Shown piece by piece: positions 50,402 through 55,789 of a stretch of DNA of 64,000 nucleotides (positions are counted from its first letter, which is position 1; every line of letters starts with the position of its first letter). The position numbers and the translations under genes are program-made. Under the pieces are notes generated by a model. The model saw only the letters and a program-made list of their open reading frames with translations. It was not told the origin of the DNA and did no database searches. The stretch is from IMG/VR virus record IMGVR_UViG_3300027770_000026, positions 1 through 64,000 of that record; one strand, written 5' to 3'.

Positions 50402-51118
50402 CTAGTCTAGAACTGTGCATCCAGGTACAATTGAATATCCATTTACATCTCTAAATCGTCTAAATACAGCTTCATATATCGCACCTTCCCGCCATAACAA
50501 GTTGCCGTTAGTAAAGCTACTACTAGTAGTGTTCATTGGTGTATAAAAAAAGGTATTTTTAATTATAAAGTTCTGCCTAAACCTTGTTTGCATAACGTCA
50601 TTGAGCCAATTGTCCCCATAACATATGTCTAATCCACCTGGAATATCTATCCAATCAGATTTATGGATAAACATCAACGATCCGCCATTGCCTCCGGTGA
50701 CTCCTTCATGCCAGGGAACAAGATCAATTTCTCCTGTTACTGGCAAACCACAAGATGCATCATAGGATATGTTATAAAATTGATTTGGTTTGAACACCTT
50801 ATGAATCTTATGGAATAGTTTTATATCAACTATGATGTCATCGTTGAGAATACAGATTCTGTTATATCGGCTTACGGCTACGCCAAAATTATATGCAGGA
50901 TTTACATATATGTTTTTACCAAGATCGTATAATTTAACCTTAGGGTGCGTTAATACTTCATGATTTGGCGTAGCTGCAGTATCATTGTCGATGATAATAA
51001 CTTCGCCAATTATGTCTAACTGCACAACAACAGAAAGAAAATCTAAGAATGGAGCAAATCTCCACATGGTGGGCGTCACTACTGAGAATTTAGATTCCTC
51101 TGAAATTGTTAATTCCAC
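50402..51118 (-). CDS. GT2-like glycosyltransferase (paralogue of 9454-10125)
   Basis: VVTPTMW, NIYVNPAYN, ILNDDI, GDNW. Confidence 0.8.
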   Translation of the reverse strand: MELTISEESKFSVVTPTMWRFAPFLDFLSVVVQLDIIGEVIIIDNDTAATPNHEVLTHPKVKLYDLGKNIYVNPAYNFGVAVSRYNRICILNDDIIVDIKLFHKIHKVFKPNQFYNISYDASCGLPVTGEIDLVPWHEGVTGGNGGSLMFIHKSDWIDIPGGLDICYGDNWLNDVMQTRFRQNFIIKNTFFYTPMNTTSSSFTNGNLLWREGAIYEAVFRRFRDVNGYSIVPGCTVLD

Positions 51119-52404
51119 AGCTCGAGCACCTGTTCGTAATACACAAACACATCTTCACTGTAATGCGGAGGACACCCTACAAAGAATACATTCGACAATG
51201 CCTTGTTTGCATTTGGATAGTCTGCTGCTATGCCCAGATGTTGATATCCAGGATGCAATAGTATATTGCCCGCAAAGTAGTTGCGAGTCTGAATTCGATT
51301 ACTTTCAAAGAAAGCCTGCAGTTTTTCTTTATTTGCAGCACTATCTACAATAATAGGTACACCGAACCAGCTGGGATCTGCAGCATCTAGTTTATCTGCT
51401 ATACGAGCTTGTGGAATATGTTTTTCAATTAGCGACTTAATCTTAGCAAAATTAACACGACGCTTACTATCGATTTCGTCAACCTTCTTGAGTTGCTCTA
51501 CTCCAATAGCACCTTGCATATCTAGCGGCTTGAGATTATATCCCATATTGGTAAAGAGATATTTGTGGTCAATCACACCATCATATCCATCCAACCACTT
51601 ATCAAATCTGTTACCACATGTACCACATGCTAATAGATTAGCTGCACCAACACAACGGCAATCTCGCCCCCACCAACTGATACTACGAACAAGATTAATT
51701 AGTTCGATATCGTCAGACGATACCATTCCACCTTCACCGGTAGAAATATGGTGGGCAGGGTAAAATGATGTGGACCAAGCATAATAGTAATCAGTTAACA
51801 GCTTGTTGTTCCACTTTGAACCCAAGCTATCACAATTGTCACCGACCAGTATTAGATTGTGTCGTTGACAGATATCTGCCAGCACATCCATATTGGGCGG
51901 ATTACCCAATACTGGGGACACAAAGATTGCCACCGTATTAGTGTTAATAGCTGATTCGATCTGAGTTACATCAAAATTAAGCGTGTTCATTTCAATATCA
52001 ATGAACACGGGCTTGAGATTATTTTGTACCAGAGGTGCAATGGTGGTGGGAAAGCCCACAGGGGACACAATTACTTCTGCACCGTCGCGCCATGATAGGT
52101 GCTTCTTTAGTGCAGCAATCATGGTAAGGTTAGCCGATGAACCTGAGTTCACCATGTGACTATACTTTACATTGAACTTTTTACCAAATGCCCACTGAAA
52201 CTTAGCAACATTCTCTCCGGATACCAGCCACTTGCCAGTAAGGAATGCACGTACTCCTGCTTCGATCTCATTATGGTCCCAGTATGGGCCAGAATAAAAA
52301 ACTGTGTCCTTAGAGGGATCTAGTTCCTTAGGAGTGTATGCATACTTGGGAGCGCCATTGGCTTTGACTAAAGCCGCAATCATTTGATCAATTTCAGTAG
52401 ACAT
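51109..52404 (-). CDS. rfbH: PLP-dependent DegT/RfbH-type CDP-4-keto-6-deoxyglucose 3-dehydrase-like enzyme
   Basis: NSGSSANL, GFPTT, DNCDSLG, SFYPAHHISTGEGG, GYNLK. Confidence 0.88.
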   Translation of the reverse strand: MSTEIDQMIAALVKANGAPKYAYTPKELDPSKDTVFYSGPYWDHNEIEAGVRAFLTGKWLVSGENVAKFQWAFGKKFNVKYSHMVNSGSSANLTMIAALKKHLSWRDGAEVIVSPVGFPTTIAPLVQNNLKPVFIDIEMNTLNFDVTQIESAINTNTVAIFVSPVLGNPPNMDVLADICQRHNLILVGDNCDSLGSKWNNKLLTDYYYAWSTSFYPAHHISTGEGGMVSSDDIELINLVRSISWWGRDCRCVGAANLLACGTCGNRFDKWLDGYDGVIDHKYLFTNMGYNLKPLDMQGAIGVEQLKKVDEIDSKRRVNFAKIKSLIEKHIPQARIADKLDAADPSWFGVPIIVDSAANKEKLQAFFESNRIQTRNYFAGNILLHPGYQHLGIAADYPNANKALSNVFFVGCPPHYSEDVFVYYEQVLELWN

Positions 52405-53222: not shown

Positions 53223-53528
53223 ATGTCTATTCAATATTATATTATGGTTGACCCAGATAAACCTAATAAATGTAAATTAGGTATTACTAAGGATCCACAC
53301 AATCGTATAAGATCATATCGAACAGCAAATCCAAATTGCTATTTTCTAGTAGTATACACTATACCTGATAAAATACACGAGAAAAAAATACTAGATCTTC
53401 TTAAAGATAGATTTCGTGTACAAAGCGAATATGTACATTGCCATCCTAATCTAGTAAAAAATATTGTTGAATGTTATCTAAACGATAACAATATCAAATT
53501 AGATGACGAAATTTACGGGCTGTATTGA
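53223..53528 (+). CDS. GIY-YIG/T5orf172-like nuclease
   Basis: YYIM...CKLGITKDPHNRIRSYRT...E...SEY. Confidence 0.7.
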   Translation: MSIQYYIMVDPDKPNKCKLGITKDPHNRIRSYRTANPNCYFLVVYTIPDKIHEKKILDLLKDRFRVQSEYVHCHPNLVKNIVECYLNDNNIKLDDEIYGLY

Positions 53529-53591: not shown

Positions 53592-53666
53592 TGGCTGGAG
53601 TGGCAAGGGTCGAACTTGCGACCAGACGATTAACAGTCGTCGGCTCTGCCTCTGAGCTACACTCCA
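53592..53666 (-). tRNA. trnN: tRNA-Asn(GUU)
   Basis: CT-GTT-AA loop, G73, CCA. Confidence 0.95.
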
Positions 53667-53674
53667 AAAATTAA

Positions 53675-54061
53675 TTAACGGGCGTCTTCTGCGTCCATTA
53701 CGTCGCAAGTAAGAGGCCATGGGCCGCGATGCGGTACCATCGGCTTCAACATATCATAGTCTGTATTGCCAGCAGCATGTTCTTCAATTCTGCTGGCAAC
53801 AGTTTCTGCAAGGTCACGACTGGCGTAACTGGCTACTGCGGAGTATCCACCTCTGTGTGCCTGCATCATGCGTTTGGTAGCAGCAAACTTACTAAGTCCT
53901 GCGCCATGCATGATAGCCTCAATCACCACTTGGAATGGTGTTACGTTATCGTTAAGTACAACCACTGTAGCACCACCAGGAACATACAGAGGAGCATCCT
54001 GCTTGTCTGTGCTAGGTGGACGGTCTAGTACTGTTTCTTCGGCAATTTCGTTTAATCTCAT
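53675..54061 (-). CDS. clpS: ClpS N-degron adaptor
   Basis: VVVLNDNVTPFQVVIEAI...MMQAHRGG. Confidence 0.85.
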   Translation of the reverse strand: MRLNEIAEETVLDRPPSTDKQDAPLYVPGGATVVVLNDNVTPFQVVIEAIMHGAGLSKFAATKRMMQAHRGGYSAVASYASRDLAETVASRIEEHAAGNTDYDMLKPMVPHRGPWPLTCDVMDAEDAR

Positions 54062-54065
54062 TATA

Positions 54066-54431
54066 CTATTTTACCGGTGTTGATTGAGGTTTACGGTTGA
54101 ATATTACTTTATTAAGTTCAGTATCCATAATGGTATATTCTACTGTGGTACGCTTTCTAGTGCGTACACTATTTGTATGTATAGCTTCTAGTATTACAGC
54201 AAATGCCTGCGGGCCTGTCAAGTTAGAATCGCTGATAGGCTTGCCATCTGCCAATACTTGGTGAACCTTTCTAGATCTAGCTTTGTAGTGCTTGTACTTG
54301 TCAATTATTAGTTTAACAACACCTGCGCCAAATGCTGCAGTTAATACTGCAGTGGCATCAATATTAGGCATTAGCTCTGAAAGCCAGTTTTCGTTGATCT
54401 GTTTGGATTCAGTTAGTTCATGTATTCTCAT
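54066..54431 (-). CDS. Hypothetical protein (MRIHEL N-terminus, one TM-like segment)
   Basis: ATG 5 nt after TAAATA. Confidence 0.65.
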   Translation of the reverse strand: MRIHELTESKQINENWLSELMPNIDATAVLTAAFGAGVVKLIIDKYKHYKARSRKVHQVLADGKPISDSNLTGPQAFAVILEAIHTNSVRTRKRTTVEYTIMDTELNKVIFNRKPQSTPVK

Positions 54432-54469
54432 GCAGTTATTTATACACGAGAATGAAATATATTCCCAAC

Positions 54470-54737
54470 TTTTCGCTGCGGGACCGCAGCTGAGCCACGT
54501 GGGCTACCTACTCGTTACACGGTAGGTGGTGTGGGGCGACCATAAGAATTCTTTTTTACCAAGGGGCACACCGTGCTGTTGTTTAAGAGTAAAAGCTGTA
54601 TAACCCCAGCCACTCCCCCATAATACTAATGCTGACGGATTTTACCAGCCACGTTTTCACCATGGCCTTCATCCTCGCCGCCGCCCATTTGAACTTTGTT
54701 TAAGGTGGCGTTCGCAGTCGCGTTCCGCATTACCACC
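54470..54737 (-). ncRNA. Candidate structured RNA immediately downstream of the attenuator
   Basis: GC-rich non-coding stretch with several hairpins. Confidence 0.4.
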
Positions 54738-54740
54738 AAT

Positions 54741-54774
54741 AAAAAACCCTGGGATCTTTCGATGCCAGGGTCTA
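54741..54774 (-). terminator. Attenuator terminator (GAAA tetraloop)
   Basis: ACCCUGG-C-AUC-GAAA-GAU-C-CCAGGGU + U tract. Confidence 0.85.
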
Positions 54775-54810
54775 TGTTAACACAGCAGTTGCTGCATTTC
54801 TAGACCCTAG
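54765..54810 (-). promoter_or_regulatory. Anti-terminator hairpin overlapping the leader stop codon
   Basis: CUAGGGUCUA (54810-54801) pairs with UAGACCCUGG (54774-54765), the terminator 5' arm. Confidence 0.75.
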
Positions 54811-54904
54811 TACGATAATCTCTTGGATTTTTCGACCAATAGCCACAGCGATTGGCTTCACGTATTTGTGCTTTACTAATACTGATTCCTCTCGTTGCTG
54901 CCAT
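54800..54904 (-). CDS. Putative 34-aa attenuator leader peptide
   Basis: MAATRGISISKAQIREANRCGYWSKNPRDYRTRV*; below ORF-track cutoff. Confidence 0.65.
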   Translation of the reverse strand: MAATRGISISKAQIREANRCGYWSKNPRDYRTRV

Positions 54905-54911
54905 GTTGTGT

Positions 54912-54940
54912 ATATTAAATCCTTTGTGTACGTCTGTCAA
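54912..54940 (-). promoter_or_regulatory. Sigma70 promoter initiating at or next to the leader ATG
   Basis: TTGACA-N17-TAATAT then 7 nt to ATG. Confidence 0.8.
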
Positions 54941-54986
54941 CTACAGTGTTGACTTTGTATTTAGTCCTATTTCTTAATATGTGTGT

Positions 54987-55014
54987 ATTATACACGATAT
55001 TTTGAATACGTCAA
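54987..55014 (-). promoter_or_regulatory. Upstream tandem sigma70 promoter
   Basis: TTGACG-N16-TATAAT. Confidence 0.75.
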
Positions 55015-55025
55015 ATTTTATTTGT

Positions 55026-55046
55026 CTAATAGAATCAATGACTTAG
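55026..55046. repeat. Promoter-associated repeat, half-site copy C
   Basis: Minus: CTAAGTCATTGATTCTATTAG. Confidence 0.75.
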
Positions 55047-55234
55047 TTGTTGGGAGTAATTGGGCTAACTGGTTCCGCAGTTTTCTCTGGATATACTGAA
55101 CGAATGGTCTTGAGCGGTGCTGGTGCACGGTTCAATATTTCCGGAGCTTCGGGCATGACAATCTCAGAAGTTAACTGAGTTGTGGTTCCGCATCCTGCAA
55201 GTAACAGTGTGGCTAATATGATTGTGTATTTCAT
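55043..55234 (-). CDS. o-spanin-like lipoprotein (Rz1-like)
   Basis: Lipobox LLAG-C, Pro-rich mature part, follows Rz-like gene. Confidence 0.75.
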   Translation of the reverse strand: MKYTIILATLLLAGCGTTTQLTSEIVMPEAPEILNRAPAPLKTIRSVYPEKTAEPVSPITPNN

Positions 55235-55243
55235 CTTGATCTC

Positions 55244-55789
55244 CTACTTGGCCTTAGGACGGTCTGATACCGACTTGTTAGACTTTTCTACAGCTTCCTT
55301 GACCTTTGCAAAGTAATCCTGCCAGGCTTTGATCTGTGCATCCTTCTCACGGCAAGTACTGTAGTTGTCTGTTACTACATTTAGTGCATCGGTATCTTTT
55401 ACGCCACTGATGTCAGGATTGGCACTTGCGGTAGTATCTGGAACTGCTCCAGTTACTGCCTGATCGTGTACATATACCCAGCCTTTGCTAACCTCGCATA
55501 TGCTAGGTACATCACGAATGCGGTCACGATATACTACCTGCATTTCCTTGATCTTTTGCACACGGTCAACGTACTCGGTTACTACTTTTTCCTTAATGGT
55601 GTTCTTTTCCTTATCAAATGCAAGCTGTAGATTTTGCTTTTCGATAACGTAGTTGTTGATTACTGTTTCGTATTCAGCTTTGGTTACTTTGCTGCCAGTA
55701 CGGTATCCGTAAAAGTATGTGCCGCCGATGACTAAAGCACCAACGATAATACCACCAATGATCAGATATGGGGAAGGAATGCCTAACAT
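55244..55789 (-). CDS. i-spanin-like protein (Rz-like)
   Basis: N-terminal TM, coiled coil, Cys residues (SICEV, YSTCR). Confidence 0.7.
   Translation of the reverse strand: MLGIPSPYLIIGGIIVGALVIGGTYFYGYRTGSKVTKAEYETVINNYVIEKQNLQLAFDKEKNTIKEKVVTEYVDRVQKIKEMQVVYRDRIRDVPSICEVSKGWVYVHDQAVTGAVPDTTASANPDISGVKDTDALNVVTDNYSTCREKDAQIKAWQDYFAKVKEAVEKSNKSVSDRPKAK

What the first reader, a model, noticed from the sequence alone, without database searches (positions are those of the whole stretch)
54741..55014. Leaderless leader-peptide attenuator upstream of the tRNA array: a possible translation-failure sensor
Seen: TTGACA-N17-TAATAT placed 7 nt before an ATG; a 34-codon ORF (MAATRGISISKAQIREANRCGYWSKNPRDYRTRV*) using 17 amino acids, all three Ile codons and four different Arg codons (6 Arg); its last codons and TAG stop (CUAGGGUCUA) are complementary to the 5' arm (UAGACCCUGG) of a GAAA-capped intrinsic terminator 26 nt downstream. 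Known: in ribosome-mediated attenuation a ribosome reaching the leader stop masks the anti-terminator, while stalling frees it. Inference: efficient translation terminates transcription, whereas stalling on any depleted or cleaved tRNA (or translation shut-off by host anticodon nucleases/toxins) permits read-through toward the phage tRNA cluster. A codon-sampler leader rather than a single-amino-acid run would be an unusual general sensor. Caveat: the first canonical tRNA is about 1.1 kb downstream and two ORFs intervene.
Basis: partly seen in the sequence, partly recalled or inferred. Interest (0 to 1): 0.85.

Follow-up and report, generated by a model that had tools for sequence, protein, structure and literature searches.

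The report
Phage leader-ORF attenuator before tRNA genes
An uncultured jumbo phage carries, just after strong promoters and ahead of a conserved small RNA and its tRNA genes, a short open reading frame whose stop codon lies in an RNA switch. The switch probably stops transcription when the short frame is translated to its end and lets it run on when translation falters, a known kind of control not yet described for phage tRNA genes.

Summary
On the minus strand lie two tandem sigma-70-type promoters, a 34-codon ORF (54904-54800), a 10-bp pairing between the ORF's last codons and the 5' arm of a GAAA-capped terminator (hairpin 54771-54746, U-tract to 54741).

In naked RNA the anti-terminator (-20 to -29 kcal/mol) always beats the terminator (-15.2). 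The terminator folds only when the ORF end is masked.

Three lineages (four variants) from metagenomes keep the promoters, an ORF in the same frame with the same TAG (34 or 46 codons), the pairing and an invariant terminator. In the distant lineage the element heads a tRNA array directly, with no gene in between.

This supports a ribosome-dependent attenuator: complete translation gives termination, absent or slow translation gives read-through.

- **Not supported:** the "codon sampler" claim. Amino-acid diversity is near expectation.
- **Not established:** "leaderless" is only a spacing inference, and the spacing is not conserved.
a conserved structured RNA immediately after the terminator, probably the first regulated product.

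The closest known logic is PA5471.1-armZ of Pseudomonas aeruginosa. I rate it a new variant of a known kind. There are no expression data and no two-sided covariation in the switch helices.

The parts
54987..55014 (-). Promoter P1, TTGACG-16-TATAAT (11 of 12 matches)
   Evidence: The hexamers are kept in L006 (TTGACA/TATAAT) while the spacer diverges.
54936..54953 (-). Inverted repeat GTCAAC-N6-GTTGAC overlapping the -35 box of P2; operator-like, or a hairpin in P1 transcripts
   Evidence: Kept in L006 and L023. Function not tested.
54912..54940 (-). Promoter P2, TTGACA-17-TAATAT, ending 7 nt before the ATG
   Evidence: The -35 box is invariant. The -10 box is TAATAT, TAGTAT or TATAAT in the three lineages, while the spacer differs at 7 of 17 positions.
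54800..54904 (-). Leader ORF, 34 codons plus TAG
   Evidence: Kept at 34 codons in L023 and L006, and at 46 codons in L015 with the same frame and the same TAG. Shuffle test.
54839..54904 (-). 5' hairpin of the P2 transcript (nt 1-66), which includes the AUG; specific to the window lineage
   Evidence: Pair 10:57 is A x C in the window, A-U in L023 and G-C in L006. Absent in L015.
54833..54842 (-). Conserved block CTATTGGTCG (codons 22-24, Tyr-Trp-Ser), which can pair with CCAAU upstream; possible pause hairpin
   Evidence: Same distance from the ATG (63 nt) in the window and in L015. L023 carries a synonymous TCG>TCA change. The function is inferred.
54800..54810 (-). Region 1: the last three sense codons and the TAG; 5' strand of the anti-terminator
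   Evidence: All substitutions in this strand keep the pairing with region 2.
54779..54798 (-). Small hairpin in the loop of the anti-terminator
   Evidence: L006 has G.U>A-U. L015 has a different sequence that still forms a hairpin.
54765..54774 (-). Region 2: shared strand that pairs either with region 1 or with region 3
   Evidence: Invariant in all lineages.
54741..54771 (-). Intrinsic terminator: 7+3 bp stem, GAAA loop, U6
   Evidence: -15.2 kcal/mol. 33 nt are invariant between the window, L006 and L015. L023 has C-G>U.G in the upper stem.
54634..54740 (-). Conserved structured RNA directly downstream; probably the first read-through product
   Evidence: 5 of 29 predicted pairs show compensatory changes among three sequences. 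A 1-nt indel between lineages argues against coding. No Rfam family reaches threshold.
53592..54431 (-). Downstream unit in the window: orf121 (54431-54066), ClpS-like gene (54061-53675) and tRNA-Asn (53666-53592), followed by further tRNAs down to 52472
   Evidence: The terminator scan found no strong minus-strand terminator between 54740 and 52000.

Best explanation
This is a ribosome-dependent transcription attenuator at the head of a phage transcription unit. Strong sigma-70-type promoters start an RNA whose first feature is a short ORF.

The last codons and the UAG of that ORF (region 1) pair with region 2 to form an anti-terminator. This anti-terminator is more stable than the terminator (regions 2:3) and forms first, so naked RNA reads through.

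A ribosome that translates the ORF to its stop codon covers region 1 while the polymerase makes regions 2 and 3. The terminator starts 28 nt after the stop, outside the ribosome footprint, so it folds and transcription ends at about 54741.

If the ORF is not initiated, or the ribosome lags or stalls more than about 15 nt upstream of region 1, transcription continues into a conserved structured RNA and then the tRNA genes. In the window, orf121 and a ClpS-like gene come first.

The net logic is negative feedback: good translation gives less output, poor translation gives more.

- Shown: the sequence anatomy, the energetics and the conservation.
- Inferred: translation of the ORF, termination at the U-tract, and the direction of control.
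For: 1. Energetics in all three lineages: anti-terminator -25.3, -29.0 and -19.9 kcal/mol against -15.2 for the terminator. Region 2 pairs with region 1 at every transcript length. The terminator appears in the minimum-energy fold only when a ribosome-sized stretch at the stop codon is masked.
2. The ORF is kept in four variants: 34 codons in the window, L023 and L006, and 46 codons in L015. The ATG lies 63 nt before the conserved Tyr-Trp-Ser codons in both lineages. A 36-nt (12-codon) length difference preserves the frame, and the TAG inside region 1 is the same.
3. Shuffle test: the chance of an open frame plus an in-frame ATG within 15 nt of the -10 box is 0.014 (window) and 0.0012 (L015).
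4. Substitution pattern: omega is 0.26-0.40, and the window and L023 differ by 2 synonymous and 2 conservative changes.
5. All three substitutions in the main region 1 strand (C>U and U>C opposite G, A>G opposite U) keep the pairing, and region 2 is invariant. The terminator's one change is C-G>U.G.
6. Conservation peaks at the switch: 93% between the stop and the U-tract, against 85% in the ORF and 84% in the promoter region.
7. In L014/L015/L017 the element follows three consensus promoters (TTGACA, 16-17 nt, TATAAT) in a divergent intergenic region. It lies about 380 nt before tRNA-Leu, the first gene of a 9-tRNA array.
8. Geometry: a stop codon 28 nt before a terminator allowed about 90% termination in E. 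coli, against under 10% at 5 nt (PMC4824070).
Against: - No transcript, ribosome or termination data exist. The phage is uncultured and its host is unknown.
- There is no Shine-Dalgarno sequence. In the window lineage the AUG lies in a 5' stem, and P1 transcripts would carry a 75-nt leader.
- Gene callers never called the ORF: none of the five start-site versions looked up (two from the window, three from L015) is present as an exact sequence in a collection of about 15 billion proteins, and the window's 46-aa version has no homologue.
- The peptide sequence is barely conserved between lineages.
- A second frame is also open across the region in the window, though it is closed in L006.
- No pair in either switch helix shows a change on both sides, so covariation proper is absent.
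- Only three lineages are available, and the distant one shares no flanking genes with the window.
- The omega estimates rest on about 22 synonymous sites.
Confidence: 0.55

Rival explanations
1. The switch is real but is not operated by a ribosome. A protein (in the manner of TRAP or PyrR) or another RNA binds region 1 or the conserved upstream block and frees region 2 for the terminator. Alternatively, the anti-terminator rod is simply a stabilising or RNase III processing structure at the 5' end of the tRNA precursor. Either way the ORF is untranslated.
For: - There is no Shine-Dalgarno sequence, and the AUG is paired in the window lineage.
- The RNAs are strongly structured overall (z = -4.7 to -7.3).
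- The CTATTGGTCG block is conserved at nucleotide level.
- In L006 nine clustered substitutions lengthen the rod.
- TRAP shows that a factor masking an anti-terminator is an established mechanism (PMC3064811, abstract).
Against: - The frame, the start position and the stop are kept across lineages despite a 36-nt insertion (P about 0.001-0.014 per lineage).
- No repeated protein-binding motif is evident.
- The long rod is not conserved in L015. Only the 1:2 helix is.
- An always-formed anti-terminator would leave the invariance of the terminator and its U-tract unexplained.
Confidence: 0.2
2. The functional product is the roughly 165-nt terminated RNA itself, a small RNA that possibly also encodes a peptide. 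It would act in trans like attenuator-derived rnTrpL, and control of the downstream genes would be secondary.
For: - It has its own promoter and terminator.
- In the terminated form both ends lie in helices (5' hairpin nt 1-66; the U-tail pairs with GAAAAAUCC).
- Attenuator RNAs with trans functions are known (PMC6614838, abstract).
Against: - Without masking of region 1 the RNA would not terminate, so production of this RNA still needs the attenuation mechanism.
- The 5' hairpin and the pairing of the U-tail are not conserved in L015.
- No target is known.
Confidence: 0.1
3. It is an ordinary small-protein gene with an ordinary terminator, and the 1:2 pairing is incidental.
For: The ORF is kept, omega is below 1, and Tyr-Trp-Ser is conserved.
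Against: - Between the window and L015 only 5 of the first 24 residues match, the tails are unrelated, and the lengths are 34 and 46 codons.
- No homologue and no family was found.
- The pairing is kept through three substitutions and outcompetes the terminator in every lineage, which would cripple an ordinary terminator.
Confidence: 0.07

Closest known systems
PA5471.1-armZ leader-peptide attenuator of Pseudomonas aeruginosa
   Same: A short leader ORF without a run of one amino acid. Complete translation lets a terminator form. Ribosome stalling caused by ribosome-targeting drugs, and by a tRNA defect (loss of the CCA-adding enzyme), gives read-through (PMC13041342). This is the same 'translation trouble turns it on' logic.
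   Different: It is a bacterial chromosomal element with a four-segment leader, and its target is an anti-repressor of an efflux pump. There is no sequence relationship. Here the element is in a phage, has three segments, and precedes a structured RNA and tRNA genes.
Classical amino-acid attenuators (trp, his, pheA, thr leaders of enterobacteria)
   Same: Promoter-proximal leader ORF, alternative anti-terminator and terminator hairpins, and a ribosome at the leader stop codon that favours the terminator (established knowledge; PMC1183508, abstract).
   Different: Those leaders carry runs of regulatory codons for one amino acid and have four segments, so a complete lack of translation also terminates. 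Here there is no codon run, and the three-segment design predicts read-through when translation is absent.
Drug-sensing leader peptides of resistance genes (msrDL-msrD, vmlR)
   Same: A ribosome on a short leader ORF decides whether a Rho-independent terminator forms (10.1101/2021.11.29.470318; PMC9226507, abstract).
   Different: In msrDL the stalled ribosome itself obstructs the terminator, and stalling needs a specific nascent peptide plus the drug. Here no arrest motif is known, and the ribosome would act by masking an anti-terminator.
Leaderless polycysteine short ORFs of mycobacteria
   Same: A sensory short ORF that may start at the 5' end of the transcript (10.1101/834739).
   Different: Those ORFs have a cysteine tract and control translation by unmasking a ribosome-binding site, not transcription termination. 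Here leaderless initiation is only inferred from promoter spacing and is not conserved.

Membership tests
Ribosome-mediated (leader-peptide) transcription attenuator | Short ORF close to the promoter, upstream of the regulated genes | tested here: met
   34 codons starting 7 nt after the -10 box of P2. Kept in L023 and L006, and as 46 codons in L015.
Ribosome-mediated (leader-peptide) transcription attenuator | Intrinsic terminator between the leader ORF and the downstream genes | tested here: met
   Hairpin of -15.2 kcal/mol followed by U6 at 54771-54741. Invariant in three lineages.
Ribosome-mediated (leader-peptide) transcription attenuator | Mutually exclusive anti-terminator that shares a strand with the terminator | tested here: met
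   The 1:2 helix has 9-11 bp and -20 to -29 kcal/mol, and dominates at all transcript lengths. It is kept through pair-preserving substitutions.
Ribosome-mediated (leader-peptide) transcription attenuator | ORF placed so that ribosome position selects the structure | tested here: met
   The stop codon lies inside region 1 in every lineage. Masking a ribosome footprint at the stop switches the fold to the terminator. The terminator starts 28 nt after the stop.
Ribosome-mediated (leader-peptide) transcription attenuator | Leader ORF is translated, and termination depends on that translation | not testable with these tools
   No expression data. There is no Shine-Dalgarno sequence, but many genes of this phage also lack one.
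Amino-acid-specific attenuators (trp/his type) | Run of codons for the amino acid being sensed | tested here: not met
   No run. 17 amino acids in 34 codons against an expected 15.1 +/- 1.6. Only Met1, Arg5, Tyr-Trp-Ser and the final Val are shared with L015.
Leaderless sensory short ORFs | Transcript starts at the start codon | tested here: inconclusive
   The spacing from the -10 box to the ATG is 7 nt in the window, L023 and L006, but 12 nt in L015. All lineages have further upstream promoters. The transcription start site has not been mapped.
SAM-II (SAM_alpha, RF00521) riboswitch, considered for the RNA after the terminator | Score at or above the Rfam gathering threshold, recurring in homologues | tested here: not met
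   19.8 bits against a threshold of 36 in the window. No match at all in L015.
tRNA or tmRNA-like gene, considered for 54432-54740 | Cloverleaf detectable by ARAGORN | tested here: not met
   Nothing found at default or 90% thresholds. At 80% only a spurious hit spanning the whole region appears.

The most novel reading that the evidence does not exclude
The phage uses a short ORF without amino-acid specificity as a gauge of the cell's overall translation capacity. It uses the gauge to raise transcription of its own tRNA array and of an accompanying unknown structured RNA whenever ribosomes fail to finish the leader. Causes could include tRNA depletion or cleavage by host defence nucleases, or late-infection overload. 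This would be a self-correcting tRNA supply circuit, not yet described for viruses.
Probability: 0.3. Interest if true: 0.8.

Novelty: new variant of a known kind. Interest (0 to 1): 0.6.

Why it matters
Phage tRNA genes are now known to rescue infection when host defences destroy tRNAs (PMC11555353). How phages regulate their tRNA supply is largely unknown.

An attenuator that reads out translation itself and feeds back on a tRNA array would give a concrete, testable regulatory circuit. All its parts are generic: sigma-70 consensus promoters, an intrinsic terminator and a short ORF. It could therefore be tested in a laboratory E. coli strain without the unknown host.

It also flags an unclassified conserved RNA that travels with the switch.

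Tried and rejected
- **GenBank phages:** DNA similarity to GenBank phages, near and distant modes, gave no match.
- **Rfam:** nothing reached threshold. The weak SAM-II hit was rejected because it is absent from the distant lineage.
- **Peptide searches:** Pfam and PHROGs found nothing. Exact look-up of five start-site versions found none in the collection.
- **tRNA-like structure in the spacer:** none found.
- **More lineages:**
  - Three further DNA patterns on viral contigs returned the same contigs.
  - One pattern on metagenome contigs added only L017, which is identical to L015 in the aligned region.
  - Two patterns on bacterial genomes returned nothing.
  - Homologues of orf121, of the o-spanin and of the divergent 402-aa gene of lineage 3 added L006-L012 and L022/L023, but no new lineage carrying the element.
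- **L003:** an unrelated phage.
- **Covariation in the two switch helices:** no pair has changes on both sides.
- **"Codon sampler":** not distinctive.
- **Small-protein reading of the stretch after the terminator** (JGI calls a 34-aa gene at 54626-54730): rejected because a 1-nt indel separates blocks conserved between lineages.

Full report
**Source and setting.** The window is the first 64 kb of a 265,892-bp metagenomic phage contig (IMGVR_UViG_3300027770_000026, also Ga0209086_10000003). It has no DNA relative among GenBank phages; a neighbouring phosphoesterase reaches at most 43% amino-acid identity. Nearly all genes, and 22 tRNA genes, lie on the minus strand.

Upstream of the finding are an Rz-like i-spanin (55789-55244) and a lipoprotein o-spanin (55234-55043). 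Downstream lie about 310 nt without a credible gene, then a 121-codon ORF, a ClpS-like gene (Pfam E = 1.4e-12) and tRNA-Asn at 53666, followed by more tRNAs.

**Check of the observation.**
- P2: TTGACA-17-TAATAT at 54940-54912, with the ATG at 54904 seven nt later.
- A 34-codon ORF ending at TAG 54802-54800.
- Region 1 (54810-54801), complementary to region 2 (54774-54765) with one G.U pair.
- A terminator hairpin with a GAAA loop (54771-54746) and six U.

A stronger promoter, P1 (TTGACG-16-TATAAT, 55014-54987), lies 74 nt upstream. An inverted repeat (54953-54936) overlaps the -35 box of P2.

The RNA from 54904 to 54741 is far more structured than shuffled controls (-57.1 kcal/mol, z = -5.6). 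In a scan of the whole window, this is the only strong coding-strand terminator whose 5' arm is captured by upstream sequence in the minimum-energy fold.

**Relatives.** Searches by neighbouring proteins and by DNA patterns gave three lineages:
- **Lineage 1.** The window itself (L022 is identical) and L023, which is 96% identical and reaches as far as the terminator.
- **Lineage 2.** L006 covers the whole element at about 90% identity. L008 and L007 cover part of it.
- **Lineage 3.** L014, L015 and L017 are identical in the aligned region and come from contigs of up to 331 kb. They share no flanking protein with the window.

A fourth relative, L019, has the spanin pair but different genes after it and no element. 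The module therefore begins near 55040.

**What is conserved.**
- *Promoters.* The hexamers are kept while the spacers change. Lineage 3 has three consensus promoters (TTGACA, 16-17 nt, TATAAT) in a divergent intergenic region, so the element opens a transcription unit there.
- *ORF length and frame.* The ORF has 34 codons in L023 and L006. In lineage 3 it has 46 codons. The ATG lies 63 nt before the same Tyr-Trp-Ser codons (block CTATTGGTCG), a 36-nt insertion keeps the frame, and the same TAG sits inside GGGTCTAG.
- *Chance expectation.* Dinucleotide shuffles give a probability of 0.014 (window) and 0.0012 (lineage 3) for a frame open that far with an in-frame ATG within 15 nt of the -10 box.
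- *Substitution pattern.* Omega is 0.26-0.40 on few sites, similar to the 0.5 of the neighbouring orf121.
- *Peptide.* The sequence itself is hardly conserved (5 of the first 24 residues, unrelated tails), and no homologue or family exists. This fits an ORF whose translation matters more than its product.

**The switch.** In all three lineages the anti-terminator (-25.3, -29.0 and -19.9 kcal/mol) is more stable than the terminator (-15.2). Region 2 pairs with region 1 at every transcript length tested. The terminator enters the minimum-energy fold only when a ribosome-sized stretch around the stop codon, or the whole ORF, is made unavailable.

Region 2 and the terminator are invariant between lineages whose upstream sequence is barely alignable. 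Identity between the window and L006 is 93% from the stop to the U-tract, against 85% in the ORF.

The three substitutions in the main region 1 strand (C>U and U>C opposite G, A>G opposite U) all keep the pairing. The single change in the terminator is C-G>U.G. No pair shows changes on both sides, so this is conservation with pair-preserving drift, not covariation proper.

The terminator starts 28 nt after the stop codon. At that distance a terminating ribosome did not interfere with a terminator in E. coli (about 90% termination, against under 10% at 5 nt; PMC4824070).

**Most likely mechanism (inferred).** Naked leader RNA folds the anti-terminator and the polymerase reads through. A ribosome that reaches the UAG covers region 1 while regions 2 and 3 emerge, so the terminator forms and a roughly 164-nt RNA is released. 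Failure to initiate, slow elongation or stalling upstream gives read-through.

This differs from the four-segment trp-type leaders, where a complete lack of translation also terminates (established knowledge). It matches the logic reported for PA5471.1-armZ of Pseudomonas aeruginosa. There, complete leader translation forms the terminator, and stalling gives read-through. That stalling can result from a tRNA CCA-end defect (PMC13041342).

**What the switch controls.** Immediately after the U-tract lies a structured RNA (54740-54634) conserved in all lineages. Five of its 29 predicted pairs show compensatory changes among only three sequences, and a further loop-tail pairing covaries (GAAC:GUUC against GAGC:GCUC). 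A 1-nt indel between conserved blocks rules out the 34-aa gene that JGI calls there.

The RNA matches no Rfam family. A 19.8-bit SAM-II hit in the window does not recur in lineage 3. It is not tRNA-like, and it is absent from 185,579 bacterial and archaeal species genomes.

In lineage 3 the first tRNA of a nine-tRNA array starts about 380 nt after the terminator, with no gene between. In the window, orf121 and the ClpS-like gene intervene. The terminator scan found no strong minus-strand terminator between them and the tRNAs.

- *"Codon sampler".* This is not distinctive: 17 amino acids against 15.1 +/- 1.6 for random 34-residue stretches of this phage's own proteins (P = 0.19), and 19 against 16.6 +/- 1.5 for lineage 3 (P = 0.09). 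The six Arg fall to four and two in the relatives.
- *"Leaderless".* This rests on a 7-nt spacing that becomes 12 nt in lineage 3. Upstream promoters would give leadered transcripts in every lineage. In the window lineage the AUG is the first base of a 66-nt hairpin, a hairpin that itself shows supportive changes at pair 10:57 (A x C, A-U, G-C). Many genes of this phage lack a Shine-Dalgarno sequence, so its absence here says little either way.
- *Sensing of anticodon nucleases.* This is conjecture. It is made plausible only by work showing that phage tRNAs counter such defences (PMC11555353).

**Rivals.**
- A factor-operated or purely structural leader with an untranslated ORF (0.2). This is the main alternative, and it is disfavoured by the frame conservation.
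- A trans-acting roughly 165-nt RNA as the real product (0.1). This is compatible with attenuation.
- An ordinary small-protein gene with an ordinary terminator (0.07). The dominant anti-terminator argues against it.

**Novelty and score.** Leader-peptide attenuation, including versions that sense general translation trouble, is known. Full-text searches found no description of one in a phage or ahead of a tRNA array. I rate it a new variant of a known kind, with interest 0.6. Comparative support is good for an uncultured phage, and the circuit is testable in E. coli. It rests on three lineages and no expression data.

Noticed in passing
window 54634-54740 (minus strand): Structured RNA directly after the terminator, conserved in all three lineages. 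Five of 29 predicted pairs are compensatory, and a possible pseudoknot covaries (GAAC:GUUC against GAGC:GCUC). It matches no Rfam family, is not tRNA-like, and is absent from bacterial genomes. JGI's 34-aa gene call at 54626-54730 is probably wrong, because a 1-nt indel separates blocks conserved between lineages.
   Followed up: partly
window 54432-54620 (minus strand): The untranslated stretch before orf121 is 95-100% identical among lineages 1 and 2 (L006-L012), more conserved than the coding sequence that follows (82% amino-acid identity). It contains the hairpin CTGCGG-TCC-CGCAG. It is not present in lineage 3.
   Followed up: no
window 54936-54953: Perfect inverted repeat GTCAAC-N6-GTTGAC overlapping the -35 box of promoter P2, kept in L006 and L023. 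It could be a repressor operator, or a hairpin in transcripts from P1.
   Followed up: no
window 53675-54061 and 53223-53528: A ClpS-like protease adaptor gene ends 8 nt before tRNA-Asn. An ORF with a T5orf172 domain (homing-endonuclease-like) lies on the opposite strand inside the tRNA array.
   Followed up: partly
L014 2202-3119; L015 2162-2791 and 2800-4676: In lineage 3 an RNA ligase gene (PF09414, E = 1.6e-22) lies about 1.6 kb from the element. A DUF559 endonuclease-like ORF sits inside the tRNA array. A stretch of about 1.9 kb holds only two tRNAs and no convincing ORF.
   Followed up: partly
L019 1-2200: This relative has a spanin pair 92-94% identical to window 55043-55789, but it continues into different genes without the promoter-leader module. 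The genome is therefore mosaic, with a junction near window 55040.
   Followed up: partly
L024 1-8978: An unrelated phage contig, found through a weak homologue of the lineage-3 402-aa gene, encodes IF3, ribosomal protein S21, a ClpX-like ATPase, HSP20 and ClpS side by side.
   Followed up: no
window 50402-52404: A DegT/DnrJ/EryC1-family aminotransferase (E = 2.2e-67) and a 238-aa ORF lie between two groups of tRNA genes.
   Followed up: no
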